Assembly: GCF_006345805.1 (NCBI RefSeq)
Contig: NC_042998.1
Span: 197,098,001-197,162,000 of the forward strand
Origin: Octopus sinensis
Taxonomy: Eukaryota
Direction of reading: 5' to 3'
DNA: 64,000 bases
Shown: in pieces, positions 6,286 through 61,989 of the stretch
Layout: each line of letters starts with the position of its first letter
How positions within the stretch are numbered: the first letter of the stretch is position 1
Notes under the pieces: generated by a model
What the model saw: only the letters and a program-made list of their open reading frames with translations
Told to the model about the DNA's origin: nothing
Databases searched by the model: none
Translations under genes and position numbers: made by a program

Positions 6286-6712
6286 TTCTAGTAATGTGTA
6301 AGTGAAAGATTTATTCAGTTGAATACATGAGGGTAACAACTGCCAGTTAGCTCCTACTTAGTCGGAAGCCCGTTTAATCAGAAGTCAACATTGCCACTGA
6401 CCAGCTCCCTAGCTAGCCAGCAGTGAAGTTCCCGTCTACAGTTCATCTGTCATAAATCCTTGGGCAGTGCCCTACAATAGTCTATTTAGGGATTATTTAA
6501 CTGGACTCCTTATATAAAAATATTTTGTAATAAAATTGGGAAAATTTTCAGTATTGGAAATGTGCTATGATAGAGATGAAGTGGGGGGGGACTTACTGTA
6601 GTGGAATAGATCTACTTGGTCTATTTTATATTTTTATACTTTATTTATTAAACTTTTGTATACTTGTTGAAAATACAAAATCATTATATATATGTGTATA
6701 TATATATATATG

Positions 6713-6926
6713 TTGCCAGCCTCACCTGGCACCTGTGCAGGTGGCACGTAAAAAGCACCCACTACACTCATGGAGTGGTTGGCGTTAGGAAGGGCATTCA
6801 GCTGTAGAAACATTGCCAGATTAGACTGGAGCCTGGTGCAGCCTTCTGGCTTCCCAGATCCCCGGTCGAACCGTCCAACCCATGCTAGCATGGAGAACGG
6901 ACGTTAAACAATGATGATGATGATGA
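6713..6926 (+). mobile_element. Family R SINE, 5'-truncated
   Basis: RTE-type tail plus (GAT)n. Confidence 0.85.
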
Positions 6927-12306: not shown

Positions 12307-13722
12307 TCATCACCACCATCTTCATCATCATTTAGCATCTGTTGTCCATGCTGGCATAGGTTGGATGGTTTTACCAGGGCTGGTAAGCTGAAGGGCTGCA
12401 CCAAACTCCAGTCTGATTTGGCGTGGTTTCTATGGCTAGATGCCCTTCCTAATGCCAACCACTCTGAGAGTGTAATGGGTGCTTTTTACATGCCACTAGC
12501 ACATGTGCTCGGTTTGCGTGACACCAGTCTCTGCCATGACTATGATTTCTCATGGCTTGATGGGTCTTCTTCTCAAGCATGACATAATGCCAAAGGTCTC
12601 AGTCATTTGTCATTGCCTTTGTGAGGCCCAACACTCGAAAGGTGCTTTTTATGTGCCACCGGCATGGGTGCCAGTTATGTGACACCACCATTGGCCACAT
12701 TGCCTCTGCGAGGCCCAATGCTTACAAGGTGTATTTTATGTGCCACCGGCATGGGTGCCAGTTATGTGACACTACCATTGGCCACATTGCCTCTGCGAGG
12801 CCCAATGCTTACAAGGTGTATTTTATGTGCCACCGGCATGGGTGCCAGTTATGTGACACCACCATTGGCCACATTGCCTCTGCGAGGCCCAATGCTTACA
12901 AGGTGTATTTTATGTGCCACCGGCATGGGTGCCAGTTATGTGACACCACCATTGGCCACATTGCCTCTGCGAGGCCCAATGCTTACAAGGTGTATTTTAT
13001 GTGCCACCGGCATGGGTGCCAGTTATGTGACACCACCATTGGCCACATTGCCTCTGCGAGGCCCAATGCTTACAAGGTGTATTTTATGTGCCACCGGCAT
13101 GGGTGCCAGTTATGTGACACCACCATTGGCCACATTGCCTCTGCGAGGCCAATGCTTACAAGGTGTATTTTATGTGCCACCGGCATGGGTGCCAGTTATG
13201 TGACACTACCATTGGCCACATTGCCTCTGCGAGGCCCAATGCTTACAAGGTGTATTTTATGTGCCACCGGCATGGGTGCCAGTTATGTGACACTACCATT
13301 GGCCACATTGCCTCTGCGAGGCCCAATGCTTACAAGGTGTATTTTATGTGCCACCGGCATGGGTGCCAGTTATGTGACACCACCATTGGCCACATTGCCT
13401 CTGCGAGGCCCAATGCTTACAAGGTGTATTTTATGTGCCACCGGCATGGGTGCCAGTTATGTGACACCACCATTGGCCACATTGCCTCTGCGAGGCCCAA
13501 TGCTTACAAGGTGTATTTTATGTGCCACCGGCATGGGTGCCAGTTATGTGACACCACCATTGGCCACATTGCCTCTGCGAGGCCCAATGCTTGCAAGGTG
13601 TATTTTATGTTCCACCGGCATGGGTGCCAGTTATGTGACACTGGCAACAGCCACAACTATGATTTCATTTGGCTTGCTGAGTTTTCTCAAGCACAACATA
13701 TCACCAAAAGTCTCAGTCACTA
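12307..13722 (-). mobile_element. Family R element carrying an internal 87-bp array
   Basis: Reverse RTE-type tail at 12330-12500; family head fragments at 12520-12620 and 13640-13722. Confidence 0.75.
12650..13640. repeat. Tandem array, ~11 x 87 bp
   Basis: gaggccc recurs at 12710, 12797, ...; one unit has a 1-bp deletion near 13148. Confidence 0.95.
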
Positions 13723-13848
13723 GTTAGCCAAAGGACTTGGTTACTAGTATCTTTGCACACACACACACACACACACACAAATGATGAGCAATATCTGTTT
13801 ACCAAATTTCATATAAAGGGATTTAGCTCAAACTAAATTACACACACA

Positions 13849-15324: not shown

Positions 15325-16485
15325 AAAGGTGGCAAGCTGGCAGAAACGTTAGCACGTCGGACGAAATGCTTAGCGGTATTTCGTCTGCCGCTACGTTCTG
15401 AGTTCAAATTCCGCTGAGGTCGACTTTGCCTTTCATCCATTTGGGGTTGATTAAATAAGTACCAGTTACGCACTGGAGTTGATATAATCGAATTAATCCG
15501 TTTGTCTGTCCTTGTTTGTCCTCTCTGTGTTTAGCCCCTTGTGGGTAGTAAAGAAATAGGTATTTCGTCTGTCTTTATATTCTGAGTTCAAATTCCGCCG
15601 AGGTTGACTTTGCCTTTCATCCTTTCAGGGTCGATTAAATAAGTACCAGTTACCCACTGGGGTCGATATAATCGACTTAATCCCTTTGTCTGTCCTTGTT
15701 TGTCCCCTCTGTGTTTAGCCCCTTGTGGGTAGTAAAGAAATAGGTATTTCGTCTGTCTTTATATTCTGAGTTCAAATTCCGCCGAGGTCGACTTTGCCTT
15801 TCATCCTTTCGGGGTCGATAAATTAAGTAGCAGTTACGCACTGGAGTCGATGTAATCGACTTAATCCATTTGTCTGTCCTTGTTTGTCCCCTCTGTGTTT
15901 AACCCCTTGTGGGTAGTAAAGAAATAGGTATTTCGTCTGCCGCTACGTTCTGAGTTCAAATTCCGCTGAGGTCGACTTTGCCTTTCATCCTTTCGGGGTC
16001 GATTAAATAAGTACTAGTTACGCACTGGGGTCGATGTAATCGACTTAATCCGTTTGTCTGTCCTTGTTTGTCCCCTCTGTGTTTAGCCCCTTGTGGTAGT
16101 AAGAAGAAGTAAGAAATAGGTATTTCGTCTGCCGCTACGTTCTGAGTTCAAATTCCGCTGAGGTCGACTTTGCCTTTCATCCTTTCGGGGTCGATTAAAT
16201 AAGTACCAGTTACACACTGGGGTCGATATAATCGACTTAATCCATTTGTCTGTCCTTGTTTGTCCTCTCTGTGTTTAGCCCCTTGTGGGTAGTAAAGAAA
16301 TAGGTATTTCGTCTGTCTTTATATTCTGAGTTCAAATTCCGCTGAGGTCGACTTTGCCTTTCATCCTTTCAGGGTCGATTAAATAAGTACCAGTTACGCA
16401 CTGGGGTCGATATAATCGACTTAATCTGTTTGTCTGTCCTTGTTTGTCCCCTCTGTGTTTAGCCCTTTGTGGGTTGTAAACAAAT
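15325..16485 (+). repeat. Family M SINE concatemer: one headed copy plus five ~184-bp headless copies
   Basis: Unit starts at 15560, 15744, 15928, 16120, 16304; bounded by 13-bp TSD atatactggatca (15312-15324, 16486-16498). Confidence 0.9.
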
Positions 16486-16697
16486 ATATACTGGATCATC
16501 TGAAACAAATGCTTTTTAATAACACAAAACAATTTTAGCCTGATTACGACTTCTAAGCAAATGTTAAAAAACATATAACTGTTACATTTGTTCTGTATTA
16601 TTGTTTGTCTTACTCCATCAGTCTATTTGCCTCTTTCTTTCATTCACATTGTATGTCTGTCTGTTCTTCTCTTGTGTGTCGAACATAGAAACGCACA

Positions 16698-16869
16698 GGC
16701 GTAGGAGTGGCTGTGTGGTAAGTAGCTTGCTAACCAACCACATGGTTCCGGGTTCAGTCCCACTGCGTGGCACCTTGGGCAAGTGTCTTCTGCTATAGCC
16801 CCGGGGCCGACCAATGCCTTGTGAGTGGATTTGGTAGATGGAAACTGAAAGAAGTGTCGTATATATGTA
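16698..16869 (+). mobile_element. Family O SINE, 5' half (3' half at 25446-25652)
   Basis: Head through gtcgtatatatgta, then an abrupt switch to satellite. Confidence 0.85.
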
Positions 16870-19800
16870 CTTAAAAAACGCAGCCCCAAACTTCTGCTCT
16901 TTCATCCATTCATTCATCTAGCAGATAAGTTGAATGCTTATTTATTTATTTATTTTCACTTCCCCATCAATCACACATGCTTTCTTATCTATCTAACTAT
17001 TTTTAACTAATTTCTATATCTATCTAATTATTTTAACTAATTATCCATTACCCATCTCGCCTCCCGTGTATTCATCAACCATCGTGTATTCGCGCCTTCT
17101 TCTCCGGACAATCTTTACTTAAAAAACGCAGCCCCAAACTTCTGCTCTTTCATCCATTCATTCATCTAGCAGATAAGTTGAATGCTTATTTATTTATTTA
17201 TTTTCACTTCCCCATCAATCACACATGCTTTCTTATCTATCTAACTATTTTTAACTAATTTCTATATCTATCTAATTATTTTAACTAATTTATCCATTAC
17301 CCATCTCGCCTCCCGTGTATTCATCAACCATCGTGTATTCGCGCCTTCTTCCTCCGGACAATCTTTACTTAAAAAATGCAGCCCCAAACTTCTGCTCTTT
17401 CATCCATTCATTCATCTAGCAGATAAGTTGAATGCTTATTTATTTATTTATTTTCACTTCCCCATCAATCACACATGCTTTCTTATCTATCTAACTATTT
17501 TTAACTAATTTCTATATCTATCTAATTATTTTAACTAATTTATCCATTACCCATCTCGCCTCCCGTGTATTCATCAACCATCGTGTATTCGCGCCTTCTT
17601 CTCCGGACAATCTTTACTTAAAAAACGCAGCCCCAAACTTCTGCTCTTTCATCCATTCATTCATCTAGCAGATAAGTTGAATGCTTATTTATTTATTGAT
17701 TTTCACTTCCCCATCAATCACACATGCTTTCTTATCTATCTAACTATTTTTAACTAATTTCTATATCTATCTAATTATTTTAACTAATTTATCCATTACC
17801 CATCTCGCCTCCCGTGTATTCATCAACCATCGTGTATTCGCGCCTTCTTCCTCCGGACAATCTTTACTTAAAAAATGCAGCCCCAAACTTCTGCTCTTTC
17901 ATCCATTCATTCATCTAGCAGATAAGTTGAATGCTTATTTATTTATTTATTTTCACTTCCCCATCAATCACACATGCTTTCTTATCTATCTAACTATTTT
18001 TAACTAATTTCTATATCTATCTAATTATTTTAACTAATTTATCCATTACCCATCTCGCCTCTCGTGTATTCGCGCCTTCTTCCTCCGGACAATCTTTACT
18101 TAAAAAACGCAGCCCCAAACTTCTGCTCTTTCATCCATTCATTCATCTAGCAGATAAGTTGAATGCTTATTTATTTATTTATTTTCACTTCCCCATCAAT
18201 CACACATGCTTTCTTATCTATCTAACTATTTTAAACTAATTTCTATATCTATCTAATTATTTTAACTAATTTATCCATTACCCATCTCGCCTCCCGTGTA
18301 TTCATCAACCATCGTGTATTCGCGCCTTCTTTCTCTGGACAATCTTTACTTAAAAAATGCAGCCCCAAACTTCTGCTCTTTCATCCATTCATTCATCTAG
18401 CAGATAAGTTGAATGCTTATTTATTTATTTATTTTCACTTCCCCATCAATCACACATGCTTTCTTATCTATCTAACTATTTTTAACTAATTTCTATATCT
18501 ATCTAATTATTTTAACTAATTTATCCATTACCCATCTCGCCTCTCTGTATTCGCGCCTTCTTCCTCGGACAATCTTTACTTAAAAAATGCAGCCCAAACT
18601 TCTGCTCTTTCATCCATTCATTCATCTAGCAGATAAGTTGAATGCTTATTTATTTATTTATTTCACACTTCCCCATCAATCACACATGCTTTCTTATCTA
18701 TCTAACTATTTTAAACTAATTTCTATATCTATCTAATTATTTTAACTAATTTATCATCATTACCCATCTCGCCTCCCGTGTATTCATCAACCATCGTGTA
18801 TTCGCTTCCTTCTTTCTCTGGACAATCTTTACTTAAAAAATGCAGCCCCAAACTTCTGCTCTTCATCCATTCATTCATCTAGCAGATAAGTTGAATGCTT
18901 ATTTATTATTTATTGATTTTCACTTCCCCATCAATCACACATGCTTTCTTATCTATCTAACTATTTTTAACTAATTTCTATATCTATCTAATTATTTTAA
19001 CTAATTTATCCATTACCCATCTCGCCTCCCGTGTATTCATCAACCATCGTGTATTCGCGCCTTCTTTCTCTGGACAATCTTTACTTAAAAAATGCAGCCC
19101 AAACTTCTGCTCTTTCATCCATTCATTCATCTAGCAGATAAGTTGAATGCTTATTTATTTATTTATTTTCACTTCCCATCAATCACACATGCTTTCTTAT
19201 CTATCTAACTATTTTTAACTAATTTCTATATCTATCTAATTATTTTAACTAATTTATCCATTACCCATCTCGCCTCCCGTGTATTCATCAACCATCGTGT
19301 ATTCGCGCCTTCTTTCTCTGGACAATCTTTACTTAAAAAATGCAGCCCCAAACTTCTGCTCTTTCATCCATTCATTCATCTAGCAGATAAGTTGAATGCT
19401 TATTTATTTATTGATTTTCACTTCCCACTCCCCATCAATCACACATGCTTTCTTATCTATCTAACTATTTTTAACTAATTTCTATATCTATCTACTAATT
19501 ATTTTAACTAATTTATCCATTACCCATCTCGCCTCCCGTGTATTCATCAACCATCGTGTATTCGCGCCTTCTTTCTCTCTTATCTCTTTACAATTTAAAA
19601 AATGCAGCCCCAAACTTCTGCTCTTTCATTCCATTCATTCATCATTCGCAGCATATAGATAAGTTAATGCTTATTTATTTATTTATTTATTTTCACTTCC
19701 CCATCAATCACACATGCTTTCTTATCTATCTAACTATTTTTAACTAATTTCTATATCTATCTAATTATTTTAACTAATTTATCCATTACCCATCTCGCCT

Positions 19801-22800
19801 CCCGTGTATTCATCAACCATCGTGTATTCGCGCCTTCTTTCTCTGGACAATCTTTACTTAAAAAATGCAGCCCCAAACTTCTCTCTTTCATCCATTCATT
19901 CATCTAGCAGATAAGTTGAATGCTTATTTATTTATTTATTTTCACTTCCCCATCAATCACACATGCTTTCTTATCTATCTAACTATTTTTAACTAATTCT
20001 ATATCTATCTAATTATTTTAACTAATTTATCCATTACCATCTCGCCTCCCGTGTATTCATCAACCATCGTGTATTCGCGCCTTCTTTCTCTGGACAATCT
20101 TTACTTAAAAAATGCAGCCCCAAACTTCTGCTCTTTCATCCATTCATTCATCTAGCAGATAAGTTGAATGCTTATTTATTTATTTATTTTCACTTCCCCA
20201 TCAATCACACATGCTTTCTTATCTATCTAACTATTTTTAACTAATTTCTATATCTATCTAATTATTTTAACTAATTTATCCATTACCCATCTCGCCTCCC
20301 GTGTATTCATCAACCATCGTGTATTCGCGCCTTCTTTCTCTGGACAATCTTTACTTAAAAAATGCAGCCCCAAACTTCTGCTCTTTCATCCATTCATTCA
20401 TCTAGCAGATAAGTTGAATGCTTATTTATTTATTTATTTTCACTTCCCCATCAATCACACATGCTTTCTTATCTATCTAACTATTTTTAACTAATTTCTA
20501 TATCTATCTAATTATTTTAACTAATTTATCCATTACCCATCTCGCCTCTCGTGTATTCGCGCCTTCTTCCTCCGGACAATCTTTACTTAAAAAATGCAGC
20601 CCCAAACTTCTGCTCTTTCATCCATTCATTCATCTAGCAGATAAGTTGAATGCTTATTTATTTATTTATTTTCACTTCCCCATCAATCACACATGCTTTC
20701 TTATCTATCTAACTATTTTTAACTAATTTCTATATCTATCTAATTATTTTAACTAATTTATCCATTACCCATCTCGCCTCCCGTGTATTCATCAACCATC
20801 GTGTATTCGCGCCTTCTTCCTCCGGACAATCTTTACTTAAAAAACGCAGCCCCAAACTTCTGCTCTTTCATCCATTCATTCATCTAGCAGATAAGTTGAA
20901 TGCTTATTTATTTATATTTCACTTCCCCATCAATCACACATGCTTTCTTATCTATCTAACTATTTTTAACTAATTTCTATATCTATCTAATTATTTTAAC
21001 TAATTTATCCATTACCCATCTCGCCTCGTGTATTCATCAACCATCGTGTATTCGCGCCTTCTTCTCCGGACAATCTTTACTTAAAAAATGCAGCCCCAAA
21101 CTTCTGCTCTTTCATCCATTCATTCATCTAGCAGATAAGTTGAATGCTTATTTATTTATTTATTTTCACTTCCCCATCAATCACACATGCTTTCTTATCT
21201 ATCTAACTATTTTTAACTAATTTCTATATCTATCTAATTATTTTAACTAATTTATCCATTACCCATCTCGCCTCCCGTGTATTCATCAACCATCGTGTAT
21301 TCGCGCCTTCTTTCTCTGGACAATCTTTACTTAAAAAATGCAGCCCCAAACTTCTGCTCTTTCATCCATTCATTCATCTAGCAGATAAGTTGAATGCTTA
21401 TTTATTTATTTATTTTCACTTCCCCATCAATCACACATGCTTTCTTATCTATCTAACTATTTTAAACTAATTTCTATATCTATCTAATTATTTAACTAAT
21501 TTATCCATTACCCATCTCGCCTCCCGTGTATTCATCAACCATCGTGTATTCGCGCCTTCTTCTCCGGACAATCTTTACTTAAAAAATGCAGCCCCAAACT
21601 TCTGCTCTTTCATCCATTCATTCATCTAGCAGATAAGTTGAATGCTTATTTATTTATTGATTTTCACTTCCCCATCAATCACACATGCTTTCTTATCTAT
21701 CTAACTATTTTTAACTAATTTCTATATCTATCTAATTATTTTAACTAATTTATCCATTACCATCTCGCCTCCCGTGTATTCATCAACCATCGTGTATTCG
21801 CGCCTCTTTCTCTGGACAATCTTTACTTAAAAAATGCAGCCCCAAACTTCTGCTCTTTCATCCATTCATTCATCTAGCAGATAAGTTGAATGCTTATTTA
21901 TTTATTTATTTTCACTTCCCCATCAATCACACATGCTTTCTTATCTATAAACTATTTTTAACTAATTTCTATATCTATCTAATTATTTTAACTAATTTAT
22001 CCATTACCCATCTCGCCTCCCGTGTATTCATCAACCATCGTGTATTCGCGCCTTCTTTCTCTGGACAATCTTTACTAAAAAATGCAGCCCCAAACTTCTG
22101 CTCTTTCATCCATTCATTCATCTAGCAGATAAGTTGAATGCTTATTTATTTATTATTTTCACTTCCCCATCAATCACACATGCTTCTTATCTATCTAACT
22201 ATTTTAACTAATTTCTATATCTATCTAATTATTTTAACTAATTTATCCATTACCCATCTCGCCTCTCGTGTATTCGCGCCTTCTTCCTCCGGACAATCTT
22301 TACTTAAAAAATGCAGCCCCAAACTTCTGCTCTTTCATCCATTCATTCATCTAGCAGATAAGTTGAATGCTTATTTATTTATTTATTTTCACTTCCCCAT
22401 CAATCACACATGCTTTCTTATCTATCTAACTATTTTTAACTAATTTCTATATCTATCTAATTATTTTAACTAATTTATCCATTACCCATCTCGCCTCTCG
22501 TGTATTCGCGCCTTCTTCCTCCGGACAATCTTTACTTAAAAAACGCAGCCCCAAACTTCTGCTCTTTCATCCATTCATTCATCTAGCAGATAAGTTGAAT
22601 GCTTATTTATTTATTTATTTTCACTTCCCCATCAATCACACATGCTTTCTTATCTATCTAACTATTTTTAACTAATTTCTATATCTATCTAATTATTTTA
22701 ACTAATTATCCATTACCCATCTCGCCTCCGTGTATTCATCAACATCGTGTATTCGCGCCTTCTTCCTCCGGACAATCTTTACTAAAAAATGCAGCCCCAA

Positions 22801-24950
22801 ACTTCTGCTCTTTCATCCATTCATTCATCTAGCAGATAAGTTGAATGCTTATTTATTTATTTATTTTCACTTCCCCATCAATCACACATGCTTTCTTATC
22901 TATCTAACTATTTTTAACTAATTTCTATATCTATCTAATTATTTTAACTAATTTATCCATTACCCATCTCGCCTCTCGTGTATTCATCAACCATCGTGTA
23001 TTCGCGCCTTCTTCTCCGGACAATCTTTACTTAAAAAATGCAGCCCCAAACTTCTGCTCTTTCATCCATTCATTCATCTAGCAGATAAGTTGAATGCTTA
23101 TTTATTTATATTTCACTTCCCCATCAATCACACATGCTTTCTTATCTATCTAACTATTTTTAACTAATTTCTATATCTATCTAATTATTTTAACTAATTT
23201 ATCCATTACCCATCTCGCCTCCGTGTATTCATCAACCATCGTGTATTCGCGCCTTCTTTCTCGGACAATCTTTACTTAAAAAATGCAGCCCCAAACTTCT
23301 GCTCTTTCATCCATTCATTCATCTAGCAGATAAGTTGAATGCTTATTTATTTATTTATTTTCACTTCCCCATCAATCACACATGCTTCTTATCTATCTAA
23401 CTATTTTTAACTAATTTCTATATCTATCTAATTATTTTAACTAATTTATCCATTACCCATCTCGCCTCCCGTGTATTCATCAACCATCGTGTATTCGCGC
23501 CTCTTTCTCTGGACAATCTTTACTTAAAAAATGCAGCCCCAAACTTCTGCTCTTTCATCCATTCATTCATCTAGCAGATAAGTTGAATGCTTATTTATTT
23601 ATATTTTCACTTCCCCATCAATCACACATGCTTTCTTATCTATCTAACTATTTTTAACTAATTTCTATATCTATCTAATTATTTTAACTAATTTATCCAT
23701 TACCCATCTCGCCTCTCGTGTATTCGCGCCTTCTTCCTCCGGACAATCTTTACTTAAAAAAGCAGCCCCAAACTTCTGCTCTTTCATCCATTCATTCATC
23801 TAGCAGATAAGTTGAATGCTTATTTATTTATTTATTTTCACTTCCCCATCAATCACACATGCTTTCTTATCTATCTAACTATTTTTAACTAATTCTATAT
23901 CTATCTAATTATTTAACTAATTTATCCATTACCCATCTCGCCTCTCGTGTATTCGCGCCTTCTTCTCCGGACAATCTTTACTTAAAAAACGCAGCCCCAA
24001 ACTTCTGCTCTTTCATCCATCATTCATCTAGCAGATAAGTTGAATGCTTATTTATTTATTTATTTTCACTTCCCCATCAATCACACATGCTTTCTTATCT
24101 ATCTAACTATTTTTAACTAATTTCTATATCTATCTAATTATTTTAACTAATTATCCATTACCCATCTCGCCTCCGTGTATTCATCAACCATCGTGTATTC
24201 GCGCCTTCTTCCTCCGGACAATCTTTACTTAAAAAATGCAGCCCCAAACTTCTGCTCTTTCATCCATTCATTCATCTAGCAGATAAGTTGAATGCTTATT
24301 TATTTATTTATTTTCACTTCCCCATCAATCACACATGCTTTCTTATCTATCTAACTATTTTTAACTAATTTCTATATCTATCTAATTATTTTAACTAATT
24401 TATCCATTACCCATCTCGCCTCTCGTGTATTCATCAACCATCGTGTATTCGCGCCTTCTTTCTCTGGACAATCTTCACTTAAAAAATGCAGCCCCAAACT
24501 TCTGCTCTTTCATCCATTCATTCATCTAGCAGATAAGTTGAATGCTTATTTATTTATTTATTTTCACTTCCCCATCAATCACACATGCTTTCTTATCTAT
24601 CTAACTATTTTTAACTAATTTCTATATCTATCTAATTATTTTAACTAATTTATCCATTACCCATCTCGCCTCCCGTGTATTCATCACCACGTGTATTCGC
24701 GCCTTCTTCTCTGGACAATCTTTACTTAAAAAATGCAGCCCCAAACTTCTGCTCTTTCATCCATTCATTCATCTAGCAGATAAGTTGAATGCTTATTTAT
24801 TTATTTATTTTCACTTCCCCATCAATCACACATGCTTTCTTATCTATCTAACTATTTTTAACTAATTTCTATATCTATCTAATTATTTTAACTAATTTAT
24901 CCATTACCCATCTCGCCTCTCGTGTATTCATCAACCATCGTGTATTCGCG
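16870..24950. repeat. Intronic satellite, ~33 monomers of ~249 bp (short variant ~231 bp)
   Basis: cttaaaaaa(c/t)gcagcccc recurs at 16870, 17118, 17368, 17617, 17867...; short variant lacks catcaaccatcgtgtatt. Confidence 0.95.
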
Positions 24951-25445
24951 GTGCACCCGCCCTACCCACCCCCACCACCAATACTGGATATCTCTATATT
25001 TTTGCTCCATCCATACCGGATGTCGCTTCTCCCACTACCATAATAGGTGTCTACTCTTCGAACCCCACTCTTCAATACGCTATTTCACCATGCATTACCC
25101 CTCTCTTGATATCCTACGTTCTACTTGCCTAGAACCTGTCATCATTTCTCTGAACCACCCCTCCCCACTGGTGCTCTCCTATATTTCTGCACCCCCCCCA
25201 CATAAAAAAAGCACCATCCGAACGTGGCCGATGCCAGACCCCTCTGGCACCTGTGCAGGTGGCACGTAAAAAACACCCACTACACTCGCGGAGTGGTTGG
25301 CGTTAGGAAGGGCATTCAGCTCTAGAAACTCTGCCAGACTAGACTGGAGCCTGGGGCAGTCCCTAGCTCCCCAGACCCCGGTTGAAACCGTCCAACCCGT
25401 GCTAGCGCGGAAAACGGACGTTAAACGATGATGATGATGATGATG
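24951..25445 (+). mobile_element. Family R element: pyrimidine-rich body plus RTE-type tail and (GAT)n
   Basis: Directly continuous with the last satellite monomer; standard tail at 25200-25445. Confidence 0.8.
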
Positions 25446-25652
25446 ATGTATGTGTGTGTCTGTGTTTGTCCCCCTAGCATTGCTTGACAACCGATGCTGG
25501 TGTGTTTACGTCCCCGTCACTTAGCTGTTCGGCAAAAGAGACCGATAGAATAAGTACTGGGCTTACAAAGAATAAGTCCCGGGGTCGATTTGCTCGACTA
25601 AAGGCGGTGCTCCAGCATGGCCGCAATCAAATGACTGAAACAAATAAAAGAG
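25446..25652 (+). mobile_element. Family O SINE, 3' half
   Basis: atgtatgtgtgtgtctgtgtttgtccccc...gactgaaacaaataaaagag; lacks its head locally. Confidence 0.85.
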
Positions 25653-29907: not shown

Positions 29908-31385
29908 GACAGACAAAGGTAGCGTACCAGTTTAGAGATAGTAAAAGAAAAATTAACCATTTGCTCTACATGGATGATCTGAAGCTTTTTTTTAGTAAGA
30001 AGAAAAAAAAGTTACATTCCTTAATATAAACTGTAACACTCTGCAGCAAGGATAAGTGTGCAATGTCTGTCATAAAAAAGGGACAAATAGTCAGCAGTAA
30101 AGGCATTCAGTTACCAGAAGGCTTGACATTAAAATCACTGAAAGAAGGACAGAGTTATAAGTATCTTGGAGTATTAGAATCCGACAGAGTACTAACAATA
30201 GGAATGAAAGTGAAAATTGAGAAGGAGTACATCAGAAGGAAGAGGAAGCTAATGAAGTCAAAGCTAAATGGTTCAAATCTAGGGAAGGCTGTAAATACTT
30301 GGGCAATATTGTTACTTAGATATTCAGCAGCTTTTGTAGACTGGACAAAATCTGAATTAGTAAATCTAGACAAGAAGAACTAGGAAGGAATTCAATATGA
30401 ATGGAGGACTTCACCCAAGAGCAGGAGTAGCAAGATTATATTTAATTAGAAAGGAAAGTGGAAGAGGGTTAATGTCAGTAGAAGACTGCATGGGGTTAAC
30501 TAGAGAAGATACAGCCGCCTATGTGGGTAATAAGGAAAAAAGTTTAAGTGCTGCTAGAGTAACAATAGGAAATAGGGTAACTAAAAAACTGAATGAAGTT
30601 AAAAATTAGAGAAAAAGGAAGATTATCTGGCTTTTTATGGTAGATTCCCAAAGATAGTTCCAAATCATGAGACATGGTTATGTTGCAGAAAGGAAGGCTG
30701 GAAAGGGAGTTATAAAGTTTGTTAGTAGCAGCACAAGATCAAGTATTGAGGAATAATTGGGTAAAAGCCAAGATAGATAAAAACCAGGTAGATTCCAAAT
30801 GTAGGTTGTATAAATCAAAAGAGGAAAGTGTTACTCATATATAGTAAGTGAATGTAGCAGAAAGAATACAAGAAAAGTCATAACAATCTAGGGAGGATAA
30901 TCCACTGGGAGATATGTAGAAAACTAGGATTTCACCATACTGCTGAATGGTTTGAACATAAACCTAGCAAAGTGTTAGAAAGTATGAAGTATAAGATGTT
31001 GTGGGATCTTAACATTCAGACTGACAGAGTAGTAGAAGCTAGAAAGCCTGATTTAGTAGTAGTAGTAGTAGTAGTAGTAGCAGCAGCAGTAGTAGTAGTA
31101 GTAGACAAAGAGAATAGAAAGTGCCAGGTAATTGGCTTTACAGTCCCAAATGAGAAGAAAGTCAACACGAGAGGTTTGTAGAAAATAGCAAAATGCCAGA
31201 ACCTAGTCATTGAGTTGCAAAGGCTGTGGGAAGTTTGACATAAAATTCAGTTTAGTGCAGCTCTAGAAAATTGTGTTATTAGGGACAACTAGGATACTTA
31301 GGAAAGGTTCTTTGCATCTAAGGTTACCTATTGTAGCCCGATGTTAGGAATCCTTCTTTTCCAACAGTTGAATCTGTTGTGCATA
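29908..31385 (+). mobile_element. 5'-truncated, degenerate R4/Dong-like non-LTR retrotransposon (RT plus restriction-like endonuclease)
   Basis: INHLLYMDDLKLF (YMDD 29967-29978), YKYLGVLE, HPRAGVARLY...GGRGL-like motif, KCRL...ESVTHIVSEC zinc knuckle remnant, RKPDL endonuclease motif; frameshifts and stops. Confidence 0.9.
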
Positions 31386-39565: not shown

Positions 39566-39884
39566 CATGTGGCACATAAAAACACCATCCGAGCGTGGCC
39601 GTCTGCCAGCCTTGTCTGGCACCTGTGTCGGTGGCACATAAAAAACACCATCCGAGCGTGGCCGTTCGCCAGCCTCGTCTGGCACCTGTGTTGGTGGCAC
39701 ATAAAATCACCCACTACACTCTCGGAGTGGTTGGCGTTAGGAAGGGCATCCAGCTGTAGAAACACTGCCAGATCTGACTGGGCCTGGTGCAGCCTTCGGG
39801 CTCCCCAGACCCCAGTTGAACCGTCCAACCCATGCTAGCATGGAAAACGGACGCTAAATGATGATGATGATGATGATGATGATG
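39566..39884 (+). mobile_element. Family R SINE
   Basis: Two internal units plus tail. Confidence 0.85.
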
Positions 39885-44828: not shown

Positions 44829-45014
44829 TAAACTTGAATAAGAACTATGAGGTGTAAAATCTGAAAAACAGCTGAGAAATGGGTGAGTGTGAAAGACAGT
44901 GAGGCAACAGGGTATCTATATGACAGCAGGGGGGTAGGTAAACGGCTGGTATGAAGGGGAAACTATGTGAGAGCAAGGAGGTGGGTAATTCTGGGAAATA
45001 AATGAATAAATAGG

Positions 45015-45177
45015 GGCAGGAGCGGCTGTGTGGTAAGTAGCTTGCTAACCAACCACATGGTTCCGGGTTCAGTCCCACTGCGTGGCATCTTGGGCAAGTG
45101 TCTTCTGCTATAGCTCCGGGCCGACCAATGCCTTGTGAGTAGATTTGGTAGACGGAAACTGAAAGAAGCCTGTCGTA

Positions 45178-45209
<32 letters not shown>

Positions 45210-45380
45210 GGCGCAGGAGTGGCTGTGTGGTAAGTAGCTTGCTAACCAACCACATGGTTCCGGGTTCAGTCCCACTGCGTGGCATCTTGGGCAAGTGTCT
45301 TCTGCTATAGCTCCGGGCTGACCAATGCCTTGTGAGTGGATTTGGTAGACGGAAACTGAAAGAAGCCTGTCGTATATATG

Positions 45381-45417
<37 letters not shown>

Positions 45418-45625
45418 ATGTGTGTCTGTGTTTGTCCCCCTAGCATTGCTTGACAACCAATGCTGGTGTGTTTACGTCCCCGTCACTTAGCGGTTCGGCA
45501 AAAGAGACCGATAGAATAAGTACTGGGCTTACAAAGAATAAGTCCTGGGATCGATTTGGTCGACTAAAGGCGGCGGTGCTCCAGCATGGCCGCAGTCAAA
45601 TGACTGAAACAAGTAAAAGAGTAAA
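45015..45625 (+). mobile_element. Family O SINE: extra 5' half followed by a full copy
   Basis: Head region occurs twice (45015, ~45208), separated by (TA)n. Confidence 0.85.
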
Positions 45626-45669
45626 CCTTTAATGACAAAAGCCTGGGGTATAACAGGTGATATCTGTGC

Positions 45670-45875
45670 AGTGAAAGGTACAAATCTGAAGATGGTTGAT
45701 GACTTTACCTACCTGGGAAGTAACATTAGTTCAACAGATAAGAATGTCCAGGTAAGGAATGCAAAAGCATGAAATGTCCTTGACAAACACAGAATTATAT
45801 GGAAGTCCTCCCTCCCTGACAACATGAAGAATACTTTCTTCAAAGCAGTTGTTGAGACAATACTTCTATACAGTT
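45670..45875 (+). mobile_element. RTE-like LINE RT C-terminal fragment
   Basis: VDDFTYLGSNISS...IWKSSLPDNMKNTFFKAVVETILLY. Confidence 0.75.
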
Positions 45876-49119: not shown

Positions 49120-50080
49120 ATCTATATACTGTACCCAGTGTAAGCTATGGACACACAAGTGGGGTCGATTTACTTTCCACTTTTTTAAGGTGGCGAGCTG
49201 GCAGAACCGTTAGCACGCCGGGCGAAATGCATAGCCGTATTTCGTCTGCTGCTACGTTCTGAGTTCAAATTACGCCGAAGTCGACTTTGCCTTTCATCCT
49301 TTCGGAGTCGATAAAATTAAGTACCAGTTACGCACTGGGGTCGATGTAATCCGTATGTCTGTCCTTGTTTGTCCCCTCTATGTTTAGCCCCTTGTGGGCA
49401 GTAAAGAAATATATATACTGTACCCAGTGTAAGCTATGGACACACAAGTGGGGTCGATTTACTTTCCACTTTTTCAAGGCGGTGAGCTGGCAGAAACGTT
49501 AGCACGCCGGGTGAAATGCGTAGCCGTATTTCATTTGCCGTTACGTTCTGAGTTCAAATTCCGCCGAGGTCGACTTTGCCTTTCATCCTTTCGGGGTCGA
49601 TAAAGTAAGTACCAGTTACGCACTGGGGTCGATGTAATCGACTTAATCCGTTTGTCTGTCCTTGTTTGTCCTCTCTGTGTTTAGTCCCTTGTGGGTAATA
49701 AAGAAATAGGTATTTCGTCTGCTGCTACGTTCTGAGTTCAAATTCTGCCGAGGTTGACTTTGCCTTTCATCCTTTCGGGGTCGATAAAATTAAGTACCAG
49801 TTACGCACTGGGGTCGATGTAATCGACTTAATCCGTGTGTCTGTCCTTGTTTGTCCTCTCTGTGTTTAGCCCCTTGTGGGTAGTAAAGAAATAGGTATTT
49901 CGTCTGCTGCTACGTTCTGAGTTCAAATTCTGCCGAGGTTGACTTTGCCTTTCATCCTTTCGGGGTCGATAAAATTAAGTACCAATTACGCACTGGGGTC
50001 GATGTAATTGACTTAATCCGTGTGTCTGTCCTTGTTTGTCCACTCTATGTTTAGCCCCTTGTGGGTAGTAAAGAAACAAA
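49120..50080 (+). repeat. Family M SINE cluster: duplicated flank+SINE unit, then two ~185-bp headless tandem copies
   Basis: ~70-bp flank repeated at ~49120 and ~49410; tandem junctions at 49710 and 49895. Confidence 0.9.
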
Positions 50081-54442: not shown

Positions 54443-54918
54443 AGGCGCAGGAGTGGCTGTGTGGTAAGTAGCTTGCTTACCAATCACATGGTTCCGGGTT
54501 CAGTCCCACTACGTAGCACCTTGGGCAAGTGTCTTTTACTATAGCCTCGGACTGACCAAAGCCTTGTGAGTGGATTTGGTAGATGGAAACTGAAAGAAGC
54601 CTGTCGTATATATGTATATATATATATGTGTATGTGTGTGTGTGTGTGTGCGTGTCTGTGTTTGTCGTATATATGTATGTCATATGTCGTATATATGTAT
54701 GTGTGTCTGTGTTTGTCCCCCCAACATTGCTTGACAACCGATGCTGGTGTGTTTATGCTCCCGTAACTTAGCAGTTCGGCAAAAGAGACCGATAGAATAA
54801 GTACTAGGCTTACAAAGAATAAGTTCTGGGGTCAATTTGCTTGACTAAAGGTGGCGGTGCTCCAGCATGGCCACAGTCAAATGACTGAAACAAGTATAAG
54901 AGTAAAAGAGGGTAAAAG
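54443..54918 (+). mobile_element. Family O SINE with partly duplicated linker
   Basis: gtcgtatatatgtatgt repeated inside the linker. Confidence 0.85.
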
Positions 54919-56480: not shown

Positions 56481-57405
56481 AAAACTATTAAATTTCCTTA
56501 AAGAATTAAATGAAATACAGACCCTGGACATTAGTGTAAATTAATGTGGATTATAAGAGGATTTGAAACATCAGTATCTTGCAAGTCAATGTTGTATCTA
56601 TACCATCTGTGGTGTGTGCGAGATAGTTGAAGGGTCTGATGATGTCGCTGGCGATCCTGATTTTCGTGGAACGCCGAAATAGCTTGTGGTGTGTGCAAGA
56701 TAGTTGATATATAAAGGCACCTACCTTCTCTTCGCTCCGATAGAGACCCTTCAGTGGTAACGGATCCTTCGTCACAACCCCAACCTGAATACTAAAGATA
56801 GCAGCTGCTTCACCCAACCTTAGCAACGTCTTCACACGTCTTAACACCTCGACGACCCACGTTGGAAAGGCCGAAATCCCCGCTGCCTGCGAACGCCTCA
56901 CTGCTGCCCCTTCCAGTTGCCCCAGCTTCCGGTCAACGCACCCAGCTGCTGACGTCATCCCACACCATCTTCCAAATAGTACCATTTATTCTCATCACAT
57001 ATCTAAACTATTGAAATCACTTCTTTCTGCCCTTCTGTCTCTCATACTATTCTTCTCATTCTCTAAACAAAATAAATGGTAGCTGGGTGAAGAATTATCT
57101 TTTTTCCCATGCAAGTCATTGTTCTTGAGCTCTGGTTGGCTCTGATCAAGTGAATCTATACTTGAAAACATTCCAGTCATGATCATCTTATCCTATTTTC
57201 AGGTATGGTGCATCGAAGACCATTTTATCTTCACATTTTTTTCTAAAAATGGTTGGATGTAATTTGAGAGAAATTTGACAGCTATTTTTAACAGAACAAA
57301 TGGCCATATTGAGACTTTCTGGTTTGTTTGTTGAGTGGTGTGTAGGAGGAATGTATTGTGACCTCTTCGTTGTTTACCTTTTACACATTTATATTTCTTA
57401 TTTAG

Positions 57406-58351
57406 GTTTTGACCCTCGAAAGCAAAAATCCATTTTGAAAGACAAGAACATAGCTGAAGACGGAGTTCCAGTGTCAAAGCCTGATCCAAAAGCTCCTTCT
57501 GCGGAAACTGTAACGGATGTTGACTCTGCTAAATTGAAAGAGCAAAAGACGGCAGAGGAAGAAAAGAAAGACAAGGAAGAAAAGAAAGACAAGGAAGACA
57601 AGGAAATGACAAAAGGGGACCAGAAACCAGTAAAAAAAGAAGTAAAATTAGCAATGGAAAGAGGAAAACAAAAAGAAAAAATAGAGGAAAAAGAAGGAGC
57701 ATCAACAGAAACAACAGAGAAAGGAGAAAAAGAAAGGGAAAGAGGAAAAGAAAGAGAAAAAGAAAGAGAAAGAATAAAAGCCAAAAGATTACCAATGGAT
57801 AAGGAAATATTAGAACAAGAGGAATCAAGAAAATCAATACTGGCAGAGATTGAACGTTTGCGTCGGAAAATGGAATCTGAAGGATTGACAGAAGAAGAGG
57901 CGGCAAGACTTGCAGAGCTTGAAGCAAAGAATTTGGAAGTTGAAAAGGCTTTAAAATTGAAGAAAAAAGAACGAAAGATGTTGGTAGCACAAGCAGCTGC
58001 TTTAGCATATGAAGAAGCTGAGAGTTTGACAATGGAAGAAGGTGAGAAGTTAAAGAGGAAAAAAGGTAAAAGGAGGCATGTAAAGGATGAAGGACAACTT
58101 TTGGGTGCGAAGGATGAAGGACAACTTTTGGGTGCGAAGGATGACGGACAACATTTAGGTGCGAAGGATGATGGACAAGTTTTAGGTGCGGAGGATGAAC
58201 AACAACTTTTGGCTGAGAGAGAAATATCTGAAAGATTGTCAACGGATGATGAAGAAGATGAAGAAGAAGAAGTAGAAGAGGAGACTGAAAGCGAAACCGA
58301 CAGTGAGGAAATGAGATTTCTGGAAGAACTTCTGGATTCAGGTGTAGACTG
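57406..58351 (+). CDS. Exon 12, large Glu/Lys-rich, probably coiled-coil exon (GFDPRKQKS...EELLDSGVDW)
   Basis: Acceptor atatttcttatttAG; 946 nt open frame inside ORF 57300-58355; ends at donor GTAAGA (58352) or reads through to TAA 58353-58355. Confidence 0.9.
58083..58217 (+). repeat. Coding tandem repeat, 5 x 27 bp (KDEGQLLGA-like nonamer)
   Basis: aaggatgaaggacaacttttgggtgcg repeated in frame; first two units identical, later ones diverged. Confidence 0.9.
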
Positions 58352-58535
58352 GTAAGATTTTTGGGATCTAGACAAAACATTAGCGTAAGAAGTTGTTCAA
58401 ATGCCACCAAGATCAGGTTTGCTTTTCATCCCTCCAGGTTTCACAAAATAGAATACCTGTCAAGTACTGGAATCAATGTAACTGACTAAATTTCCCCTCC
58501 TCGAATTTCAGGCCTTGTATCCATTTTAGAAATAA

Positions 58536-61432: not shown

Positions 61433-61989
61433 ACCCCTCCCCCAAAATTCCTGGCCTTGTGCCAAAATTTGAAACCATTATTATTATTAATACGAAGTGG
61501 GTAGATTTGCAGAAGAGTTAGTGCCAGAAAAAATACCTTGAAGTATTTCTTTTGGCTTTTTTTGTTCTGAGTTCGAATTCTGTCAAGACCGTCCAACCCA
61601 TGCTAGCATGGAAAATGGACGCTAAACGATGATGATGATGATGATGATCAAATTAGCCTTTCCTTGTTTTGGTGTTAATAAAATAAAGCGCTGGGTACAA
61701 TGGTATCAATTTAGTCCATCCTTCCTAAATTGCTGGCCTTGTGACTAAATTAGAAACTATTAGAATGGATTCTGCATTGGCTGAACCATTAAAGCCTTTG
61801 GAAAAATGCTTTCCAGTATTTCTTCTAGCTCCCTACATTCTGTGCTCAAATTCCCCTGGGGTTCACTCTTTGCCTTTAAAATTTGTCAAGGCAAATGAGA
61901 GACAGAAAGATCAGCAATAGAAGACAAAATAGTATCACTGGAAATATCACAAAGGTTAGCACAGACAGAAATTGCAATGTTGGTTAATT

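What the first reader, a model, noticed from the sequence alone, without database searches (positions are those of the whole stretch)
16698..25652. An 8.6-kb satellite-bearing insertion splits one SINE into two halves
Seen: a family O SINE head stops at its linker (...gtcgtatatatgta, 16869), and the matching 3' half resumes at 25446 (atgtatgtgtgtgtctgtg...). A possible 5-bp duplication ATGTA lies at both junctions. Between the halves are ~33 tandem ~249-bp monomers that run without a gap into a pyrimidine-rich body and a normal RTE-type tail with (GAT)n. The array starts about 23 bp into the natural unit and ends exactly where the unique body begins. Inference: the satellite is the amplified 5' or internal segment of an RTE-mobilised non-autonomous element, so it would be a satellite born inside a retroposon, nested in a SINE, inside an intron. 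If this is general, the family could seed satellite DNA across the genome.
Basis: partly seen in the sequence, partly recalled or inferred. Interest (0 to 1): 0.8.

Follow-up and report, generated by a model that had tools for sequence, protein, structure and literature searches.

The report
Satellite-carrying retroposon inserted in a SINE
One short mobile element (SINE) has been split by an 8.6-kb insert made of 33 tandem 250-bp repeats, a 250-bp unique stretch and the standard 3' end of an abundant retroposon family; it is a clear single-locus example of a known link between mobile elements and satellite DNA, not a new kind of system.

Summary
A SINE 5' half (16698-16869) and its matching 3' half (25446/25451-25652) flank an 8.58-kb insert. 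Joined, the halves look like intact copies in the same window.

The insert has four parts:
- 33 near-identical ~250-bp monomers (16868-24950)
- a 247-bp unique stretch
- a 229-bp 3' module of the abundant "R" retroposon family, with a conserved hairpin
- (GAT)7 abutting the target

The most likely cause is a single target-primed reverse transcription event of a composite RNA. The insert already held at least ~1.9 monomers, because 21 bp exist only at monomer-monomer junctions. How many of the 33 arrived then, and how many arose later by unequal exchange, cannot be told.

- The monomer and the unique stretch resemble neither R nor the SINE, and neither recurs in the other 55 kb, which holds 17 more R tails.
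- The R module lacks the family's 5' leader, so the satellite may have been captured rather than born inside R.
- "RTE" and "intron" are untested.

One broader pattern is real: 9 of 12 long-period arrays in the window lie just 5' of an R tail. No eukaryotic genome could be searched, so generality is open.

The parts
16698..16869 (+). 5' half of the split SINE, ending in the (TA)n part of its linker
   Evidence: Full-length matches at 92-96.5% to 12 other SINE heads in the window. It differs from the window consensus at 2 of 171 sites.
16865..16869 (+). Left copy of the possible target-site duplication ATGTA. The last 2 bases, TA, also match the monomer (tTACTTAAAA), giving a 2-bp microhomology at the 5' junction.
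   Evidence: Read directly from the sequence. The evidence is weak because the site lies in a microsatellite context.
16870..24950 (+). Tandem array of 33 monomers of about 250 bp. Seven monomers carry an 18-bp deletion (226-232 bp long). The array is C+T-rich on this strand, and its first unit is 5'-truncated by 21-23 bp.
   Evidence: Tandem Repeats Finder gives 16868-24950, period 250, 32.9 copies. There is no higher-order periodicity. No copy occurs elsewhere in the window.
24951..25197 (+). Unique pyrimidine-rich stretch between the array and the R module
   Evidence: It has only a self-hit in the window. It shows no similarity to the monomer (global z = -0.16) or to the R 5' repeats.
25198..25426 (+). 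3' module of the R retroposon family: about 1.2 units of its 63-bp repeat, about 150 bp of unique sequence and a terminal hairpin. It lacks the family's 5' leader.
   Evidence: It is 80-91% identical to about 16 near-full tails in the window.
25389..25420 (+). Conserved terminal hairpin of the R tail, the presumed recognition site for the reverse transcriptase
   Evidence: RNAalifold on 18 copies predicts 9 pairs, 3 of them with compensatory changes. The same roughly 45-nt end also sits on a different SINE with a tRNA-like head (by eye) at 61480-61650.
25427..25447 (+). (GAT)7 terminal microsatellite directly abutting the target
   Evidence: Read from the sequence. All other R copies end in (GAT)n or (ATG)n.
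25446..25450 (+). Right copy of the possible target-site duplication ATGTA, overlapping the last AT of (GAT)n and the following G
   Evidence: Read from the sequence.
25451..25652 (+). 3' half of the split SINE, from the (TG)n part of the linker to its AAAAGAG end
   Evidence: Matches at 89-97.5% to 11 other SINE 3' halves in the window. It differs from the consensus at 6 of 207 sites.

Best explanation
A single retroposition event placed a 5'-truncated copy of a composite RNA into the (TA)n(TG)n linker of a fairly young SINE.

**The RNA (inferred).** It read [...250-bp monomers][247-bp unique stretch][R-family 3' module with hairpin](GAU)n.

**The steps (inferred).**
1. A LINE reverse transcriptase, RTE-like but not identified, recognises the terminal hairpin and microsatellite.
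2. It nicks the TA/TG-rich linker and primes on the (GAU)n.
3. It copies through the R module and the unique stretch into the array.
4. The cDNA end is joined inside a monomer at a 2-bp microhomology (TA), leaving a duplication of at most 5 bp.

**Polymerase.** The RNA cannot have been a Pol III product, because the sense strand has 95 runs of four or more T. It was probably a Pol II or read-through transcript.

**The array.** At least about 1.9 monomers arrived with the insert. Unequal exchange has since shuffled the array and probably lengthened it to its present 33 units.

**The composite.** Monomer and unique stretch are unrelated to R, and the R module is itself 5'-truncated. The composite therefore most likely arose when an R 3' module became joined to sequence that already bore the repeat. 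The join could have come from an R insertion next to that sequence followed by read-through, or from template switching. Amplification of R's own sequence is unlikely.
For: **Shown.**
- The two SINE halves are complementary, co-oriented and colinear with intact copies.
- The insert ends in the R family's conserved 3' hairpin and (GAT)7, flush with the target.
- The same hairpin plus (GAT)n ends 18 elements in the window and sits on at least two unrelated 5' bodies, so it behaves as a portable mobilisation module.
- The 5' end lies at an arbitrary monomer phase.
- The 21 bp CCTTCTTCTCCGGACAATCTT occur only between monomers. A single-copy segment duplicated in place cannot explain the array, so more than one monomer was inserted.
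- Two other R copies also sit directly after (TA)n tracts (6714, 39569). Three of 18 against a background of 1.5% gives P about 0.002, computed after the pattern was seen.
- The sense strand has no AATAAA or ATTAAA but 95 runs of T4 or longer.
- R-linked arrays can grow in place. An old R relative with a decayed (GAT)n tail holds 11.9 units of 87 bp at 98% identity. In all, 9 of 12 arrays of period 60 or more lie 68-400 bp 5' of an R hairpin.

**From the literature.** Octopus RTE LINEs are active and have microsatellite 3' UTRs (PMC9115989).
Against: - The site duplication has only 2-5 bp and lies in a microsatellite, so it proves little. The rejoined linker is the shortest in the window, so a small target deletion is as likely as a duplication.
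- A cDNA of 8.6 kb would be long for a LINE of about 4.5 kb (3.3-kb ORF plus two ~600-nt UTRs in PMC9115989), which is why I favour later growth. However, neighbouring monomers are no more alike than distant ones, and the variants are interspersed. That pattern looks like a mature array rather than a freshly expanded one.
- No second copy of the monomer, the unique stretch or their junctions could be found anywhere.
- The partner LINE is unidentified.
- No reads were available to check the assembly.
Confidence: 0.62

Rival explanations
1. The whole 8.1-kb array was reverse-transcribed in one go from a long satellite-containing transcript. The transcript could reflect 5' transduction from a source locus where an R copy lies just downstream of a satellite array, or template switching from an R RNA onto a satellite RNA. 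On this view little has changed since insertion.
For: - Variants are interspersed, with no neighbour effect and no higher-order repeat.
- Most monomers have no private change, and both edge monomers are as homogeneous as central ones, as expected of a very recent copy of a mature array.
- The R module is 5'-truncated and joined to unrelated sequence.
- The sense strand has no poly(A) signal.
Against: - An 8.6-kb cDNA is roughly twice the length reported for the octopus RTE LINE (PMC9115989).
- Growth in place of R-linked arrays is documented in the same window.
- No source locus or second copy could be looked for.
Confidence: 0.25
2. The 250-bp unit is a normal internal segment of a dispersed R-tailed (RTE-mobilised) family, amplified within the element, and the family seeds satellite arrays at many loci.
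For: - R-tailed elements here habitually carry tandem arrays of variable copy number just 5' of the tail: 63-67 bp x 2.2-6.4, 138 bp x 2, 87 bp x 11.9.
- The insert had more than one monomer on arrival.
Against: - None of the 17 other R 3' ends in the window has the monomer or the unique stretch, even in profile searches.
- Neither is similar to R sequence.
- R's own 5' leader is missing from this copy.
Confidence: 0.2
3. Two separate events took place. A short 5'-truncated R copy first inserted into the SINE linker. Later the array and unique stretch entered at its 5' junction at the DNA level, by break repair that captured satellite DNA or circular DNA, or by ectopic recombination.
For: - The SINE linker is a fragile TA/TG microsatellite that shows other rearrangements: a head-head-tail SINE at 45013-45621 and a duplicated linker in the copy at 54444.
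- The R module alone resembles other truncated R copies such as the one starting at 39569.
Against: - The second event would have to hit exactly the boundary between the SINE head and the R module, with no loss or gain on either side.
- The array and unique stretch are co-oriented and flush with R.
Confidence: 0.08
4. The structure is an assembly artefact. The array is misplaced, or its length is wrong.
For: - Many differences between monomers are single-base indels in homopolymers.
- One patch at the m11/m12 junction (about 19570-19680) is unusually noisy, which suggests long-read error.
- Array length is the least reliable feature of any assembly.
Against: A mis-join would not leave two exactly complementary halves of one SINE on either side, with a retroposon tail flush against the 3' half.
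Confidence: 0.05

Closest known systems
SVA and related composite retroposons of hominoids (SINE-R/VNTR/Alu; LAVA, PVA, FVA). This comparison rests on my own knowledge and was not tested here.
   Same: - A non-autonomous composite built from unrelated modules.
- An internal tandem-repeat region whose copy number varies and can reach kilobases.
- Mobilisation in trans through a 3' end that a LINE recognises.
- 5' truncation and 5' transduction occur.
   Different: - The 3' module here is a hairpin plus (GAT)n of a stringent-type tail, not poly(A) as with L1.
- The repeat unit is 250 bp rather than 35-50 bp.
- Only one copy of this composite is known, so family status is unproven.
Monomeric 5' UTRs of mouse L1 (tandem ~200-bp promoter monomers, then a non-monomeric tether). 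This comparison rests on my own knowledge.
   Same: - The architecture: tandem monomers, then a unique tether-like stretch, then the rest of the element.
- The 5' end falls inside a monomer.
- Monomer number varies between copies.
   Different: - No evidence here that the 250-bp unit is a promoter.
- The element is non-coding.
- Mouse L1 carries only a handful of monomers, far fewer than the 33 here.
SINE-derived satellites in squamate reptiles (Vassetzky et al. 2023, PMC10702118)
   Same: Tandem arrays physically and historically linked to non-autonomous retroposons, arising repeatedly. The 184-bp SINE-like arrays at 15375-16486 and 49526-50076 in this window are of this type.
   Different: The 250-bp monomer is not derived from the SINE or from R sequence. 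It is carried beside a retroposon module rather than made from it.
Mollusc satellite DNAs carried within Helitron or Helentron-type elements and tandem-repeat-bearing mobile elements (Satovic et al. 2016, PMC5139131)
   Same: - Short satellite arrays embedded in mobile elements of molluscs.
- Abrupt junctions between array and flank.
- These were proposed as a route for dispersing satellite repeats.
   Different: Those carriers are DNA (rolling-circle) transposons. Here the carrier marks are those of a non-LTR retroposon: 3' hairpin, microsatellite tail and 5' truncation.
L1 5' transduction and template-switch chimeric retrocopies such as U6-L1 chimeras. This comparison rests on my own knowledge.
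   Same: Foreign sequence is joined upstream of a retroelement's 3' part and inserted in one event.
   Different: - The foreign part here is a tandem array of kilobase length.
- No source locus is known.

Membership tests
LINE-mobilised non-autonomous retroposon insertion (target-primed reverse transcription) | 3' end shared with a dispersed family and ending in that family's terminal simple repeat, flush with the target | tested here: met
   25198-25447 matches about 20 other places in the window, and all full tails end in (GAT)n or (ATG)n.
LINE-mobilised non-autonomous retroposon insertion (target-primed reverse transcription) | Target-site duplication flanking the insert | tested here: inconclusive
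   ATGTA occurs on both sides, but its ATG overlaps (GAT)n and the site is a TA/TG microsatellite. A small target deletion is equally possible.
LINE-mobilised non-autonomous retroposon insertion (target-primed reverse transcription) | Variable or truncated 5' end | tested here: met
   The insert starts 21-23 bp into a monomer, with a 2-bp microhomology to the target.
LINE-mobilised non-autonomous retroposon insertion (target-primed reverse transcription) | A partner LINE with the same 3' end (here claimed to be of the RTE clade) | not testable with these tools
   The LINE fragments in the window (30063-30383; about 45626-45760) are not joined to an R tail. No eukaryotic repeat library or genome was available. 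The RTE assignment is inferred only from the microsatellite tail (PMC9115989).
   The insert has only about 1.2 units of the 63-bp repeat and the 3' region. The leader is absent and is replaced by unrelated sequence. The insert therefore contains an R module but is not a standard R element.
Dispersed composite family (monomers + unique stretch + R tail) | Several copies at different loci sharing the same internal junctions | tested here: not met
   There is no other copy in the remaining 55 kb, although 17 other R 3' ends were found there. A genome-wide test was not possible (searches gave nothing).
Satellite DNA | Head-to-tail monomers of uniform length in a long homogeneous array | tested here: met
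   32.9 copies, period 250, 8.1 kb, and most monomers have no private change.
Satellite DNA | High genomic abundance, multiple or megabase arrays, and a typical chromosomal location | not testable with these tools
   Only this one array can be seen. The external DNA and protein searches returned nothing.
tRNA-derived SINE (the host element) | Dispersed copies of about 400 bp with head, linker and 3' part | tested here: met
   There are 12-13 copies in the window at 89-97% identity.
tRNA-derived SINE (the host element) | Head recognisably derived from a tRNA | tested here: inconclusive
   ARAGORN and Rfam report nothing. Sequences resembling the A and B boxes are visible by eye only.

The most novel reading that the evidence does not exclude
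The 250-bp repeat, its unique tether and the R 3' module form a real, transcribed composite family of SVA or mouse-L1-monomer type. The LINE machinery that serves the R tail copies it. Kilobase-scale pieces of a satellite array are thereby moved by retroposition to new euchromatic sites, where they grow. That would be a direct RNA-mediated route for seeding satellite DNA in a cephalopod genome.
Probability: 0.2. Interest if true: 0.65.

Novelty: new member of a known kind. Interest (0 to 1): 0.38.

Why it matters
Links between mobile elements and satellite DNA are well documented. Most clear cases, though, involve DNA transposons or repeats made from the element's own sequence.

This locus is different. 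A foreign tandem repeat sits between retro-copy hallmarks: a 5' truncation inside a monomer and a LINE-recognised 3' hairpin with its microsatellite. The whole lies inside a datable young SINE.

If further copies or a source locus exist, the locus would let one test three things directly:
- whether satellite arrays can be dispersed through RNA;
- how long a cDNA this reverse transcriptase can make;
- how fast an array grows after landing.

Taken alone, it is one nested insertion in a very repeat-rich genome.

Tried and rejected
**External searches that found nothing.**
- ORFs of the unique stretch and of the monomer against the 5.8-billion-protein collection, hoping to reach other contigs.
- The 351-aa ORF at 57300-58352, to identify the host gene or organism.
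- Pfam on nine ORFs.
- Exact DNA patterns from the monomer and the unique stretch in metagenome and viral contigs.
- Full-text search of papers for five diagnostic sequence strings.
- Searches for cephalopod satellite DNA papers, which returned nothing relevant.

**RNA annotation.** Rfam at gathering and E-value thresholds and ARAGORN gave nothing meaningful.

**Ideas tested and rejected.**
- The 247-bp unique stretch is a diverged monomer of the same length. Rejected: global alignment z = -0.16.
- R homology extends into the unique stretch. Rejected: local scores are no better than shuffles, and homology starts at 25198 CACATAAAAA.
- The array has a higher-order repeat or a neighbour effect. 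Rejected: mean difference is flat across lags 1-16.
- A duplication flanking the whole SINE would prove the two halves are one element. Rejected: the best shared word is 5 bp, reached by 1223 of 2000 shuffles.

**An idea I dropped.** I first read a target ATG next to most R 5' ends as microhomology priming. I no longer rely on it. In three copies the ATG may belong to the element's own leader, and I had set the boundaries by eye.
Full report
**Setting.** The window is eukaryotic and packed with short retroposons. From memory, the SINE (GGCGCAGGAGTGGCTGTGTGGTAAGTAGC...GGTTCCGGGTTCAGTCCCACTGCG...) is the abundant SINE of Octopus genomes. No tool here could confirm the organism (searches gave nothing), so this is a lead and not a result.

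**Check of the observation.**
- The SINE head at 16698-16869 matches 12 other heads in the window over its whole 172 bp at 92-96.5%. The piece 25446-25652 matches 11 other 3' halves at 89-97.5%.
- Both pieces are on the + strand.
- The head stops in the (TA)n part of the family's (TA)n(TG)n linker, and the other piece starts in the (TG)n part. Joined, they read gtcgtatatatgta|tgtgtgtgtctgtgtttgtccccc, colinear with intact copies that have short linkers (38979-, 52464+).
- The two halves differ from the window consensus at 8 of 378 sites (2.1%), which places this SINE among the younger copies.
- Between the halves lie 8,576-8,581 bp.
- Tandem Repeats Finder reports one array, 16868-24950, period 250, 32.9 copies. 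I extracted 33 monomers.

**Anatomy of the insert.**
1. *The array.* Most monomers carry no private change. Variation is confined to a few shared variants:
   - C or T at position 11;
   - three versions of the 3' end CCTTCTT[C/T/-]CT[C/T]GGAC;
   - an 18-bp deletion between two copies of CGTGTATTC, present in seven monomers.

   These variants are interspersed with no block or higher-order structure, and mean difference is flat over lags 1-16. A noisy patch lies at the m11/m12 junction. The monomer has small internal sub-repeats (30 bp x 2.1) and is 67% C+T on this strand.
2. *The unique stretch, 24951-25197.* It has no other copy in the window under BLAST with 7-mers or nhmmer. It is not a diverged monomer and has no homology to R repeats.
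3. *The R module, 25198-25426.* It holds about 1.2 units of the family's 63-bp repeat, about 150 bp of unique sequence and a terminal hairpin (25389-25420).
4. *The microsatellite.* (GAT)7 at 25427-25447 lies flush against the SINE's 3' half.

**The R family in this window.**
- About 20 places match the tail, and 18 carry the terminal CCAACCCATGCTAGCATGG...GGACGTTAAAC + (GAT)n.
- The hairpin is conserved, with compensatory changes at 3 of 9 predicted pairs.
- Typical copies start with a short leader (aa[a/t]ttgtag...; copies 43374, 40624, 26270-, 33915). Tandem units of 63-67 or 138 bp follow, in variable number (1.9-6.4), and then the unique 3' region.
- One old relative with a decayed (GAT)n tail (13730-12311, minus strand) holds 11.9 units of 87 bp at 98% identity.
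- Of the 12 arrays of period 60 or more in the window, 9 end 68-400 bp upstream of an R hairpin in the sense direction. The other three are made of SINE units.
- The last ~45 nt plus (GAT)n also end a different element, whose head looks tRNA-like by eye, at 61480-61650.

I infer that this end is a portable module recognised by one LINE, and that R-tailed elements behave like elements with a variable-number tandem repeat region.

**What the junctions say.**
- *3' junction.* It is what target-primed reverse transcription leaves: the family's terminal repeat flush with the target.
- *5' junction.* It lies at an arbitrary phase of the monomer. The first unit lacks CCTTCTTCTCCGGACAATCTT(TA) and shares TA with the target, as in microhomology-joined 5'-truncated retro-copies (the comparison is from my own knowledge).
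- *Site duplication.* ATGTA is present on both sides, but its ATG is part of the (GAT)n run and the context is a microsatellite. I count it as 2-5 bp and weak. The rejoined linker is the shortest in the window, so a small target deletion is just as possible.
- *Target preference.* Two other R copies (6714, 39569) also follow (TA)n tracts. Three of 18 against a 1.5% background gives P about 0.002, computed after the pattern was seen.
- *A firm deduction.* The 21 bp between the array's end phase and its start phase exist only at monomer-monomer junctions. The array therefore cannot have started from a single-copy segment duplicated in place, and the inserted piece already held at least ~1.9 monomers.

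**How the array reached 33 units.** This cannot be settled here.
- *For later growth in place:*
  - An 8.6-kb cDNA is about twice the reported length of the octopus RTE LINE (PMC9115989).
  - The window shows a homogeneous array inside an old R relative.
- *For arrival as a long array:*
  - The variant pattern is interspersed, with no neighbour effect.
  - The edge monomers are as homogeneous as the central ones.

My view is that the insert arrived with at least two monomers and an unknown total, and has since been remodelled, and probably lengthened, by unequal exchange.

**Origin of the composite.** Monomer and unique stretch are unrelated to R and to the SINE, and the R module lacks the family's leader. 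Three origins remain possible, and only a genome-wide search can separate them:
- a rare composite family;
- read-through from a source locus where a truncated R copy lies just downstream of a repeat-bearing region (5' transduction);
- template switching from an R RNA onto another RNA.

Whatever the origin, the RNA was not a Pol III transcript, because the sense strand has 95 runs of T4 or longer. It has no AATAAA or ATTAAA, against 89 AATAAA on the other strand. That is permissive for a long Pol II transcript, although it also follows from the base composition.

**What could not be tested.** No eukaryotic genome, read set or repeat library was available. The protein-collection route to other contigs failed, as did the DNA pattern scans. 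The RTE assignment of the partner LINE rests on two things only: the microsatellite tail, and the statement in PMC9115989 that octopus RTE-2_OV has a 3' UTR made mostly of a microsatellite. The LINE fragments in the window are not joined to an R tail. The intron claim is untested.

**Comparison with what is known.**
- In function the insert resembles SVA-type composites and, in layout, the monomer-tether 5' ends of mouse L1 (both from my own knowledge).
- The wider theme, satellites linked to mobile elements, is established. Examples are SINE-derived satellites in squamates (PMC10702118) and mollusc satellites within Helitron-type elements (PMC5139131).
- I found no paper on cephalopod satellite DNA.
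- The insert is not a standard R element, because the leader is absent, and its status as a dispersed family is unproven.

**Verdict.** The structure is real and cleanly delimited, and a single retroposition of a composite RNA explains it best. It is a new example of a known kind, of moderate interest, and the interest depends on whether other copies or a source locus exist.

Noticed in passing
window 12311-13730 (minus strand): An old relative of the R family, with a decayed (GAT)n tail, contains 11.9 tandem units of 87 bp at 98% identity. The units carry the R motif CCGGTGGCACATAAAA. The array is flanked by an older duplication, about 75% alike by eye. The array therefore looks much younger than the element, which suggests growth in place.
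   Followed up: partly
window 15375-16486 and 49526-50076: Tandem arrays (184 bp x 6 and 185 bp x 3) are built from units of a second SINE-like family (GAGTTCAAATTCCGC...). The first ends only about 210 bp upstream of the split SINE. These are satellite-like arrays derived from a SINE.
   Followed up: no
window 45013-45621: Two SINE heads lie in tandem, joined at a (TA)n linker and followed by a single 3' half. This is another rearrangement or nested insertion at the same linker. The copy at 54444-54902 has a duplicated linker segment. The TA/TG linker looks like a hot spot.
   Followed up: no
window 61480-61650: A short element whose head looks tRNA-like by eye (...GTTCTGAGTTCGAATTC...) is joined directly to the last ~45 nt of the R tail plus (GAT)7. 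The same 3' recognition module thus sits on an unrelated body.
   Followed up: partly
window 6690-6713, 39580-39601 and 16855-16869: Three R-tailed insertions sit directly after (TA)n-rich tracts. This may reflect a target preference of the partner endonuclease. The P value of about 0.002 was computed after the pattern was seen.
   Followed up: partly
window 19570-19680: A patch of clustered substitutions and indels lies at the junction of monomers 11 and 12, in an otherwise near-identical array. It may be a local assembly or read error, or a real mutated patch.
   Followed up: no
window 57300-58355 (+): A 351-aa open reading frame rich in E and K contains a 27-bp repeat (KDEGQLLGA x 4-5). It has no homologue in the protein collection and no Pfam match. 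It could be a fast-evolving exon or may not be coding at all.
   Followed up: partly
window 30063-30383 and 45626-45760: Two short fragments look like the reverse-transcriptase region of LINEs (...YKYLGV......FTYLGSNI...). The first is followed by (TAG)17 at 31054-31104. Neither is connected to an R tail, and Pfam found no match for the first (the second was not scanned).
   Followed up: partly
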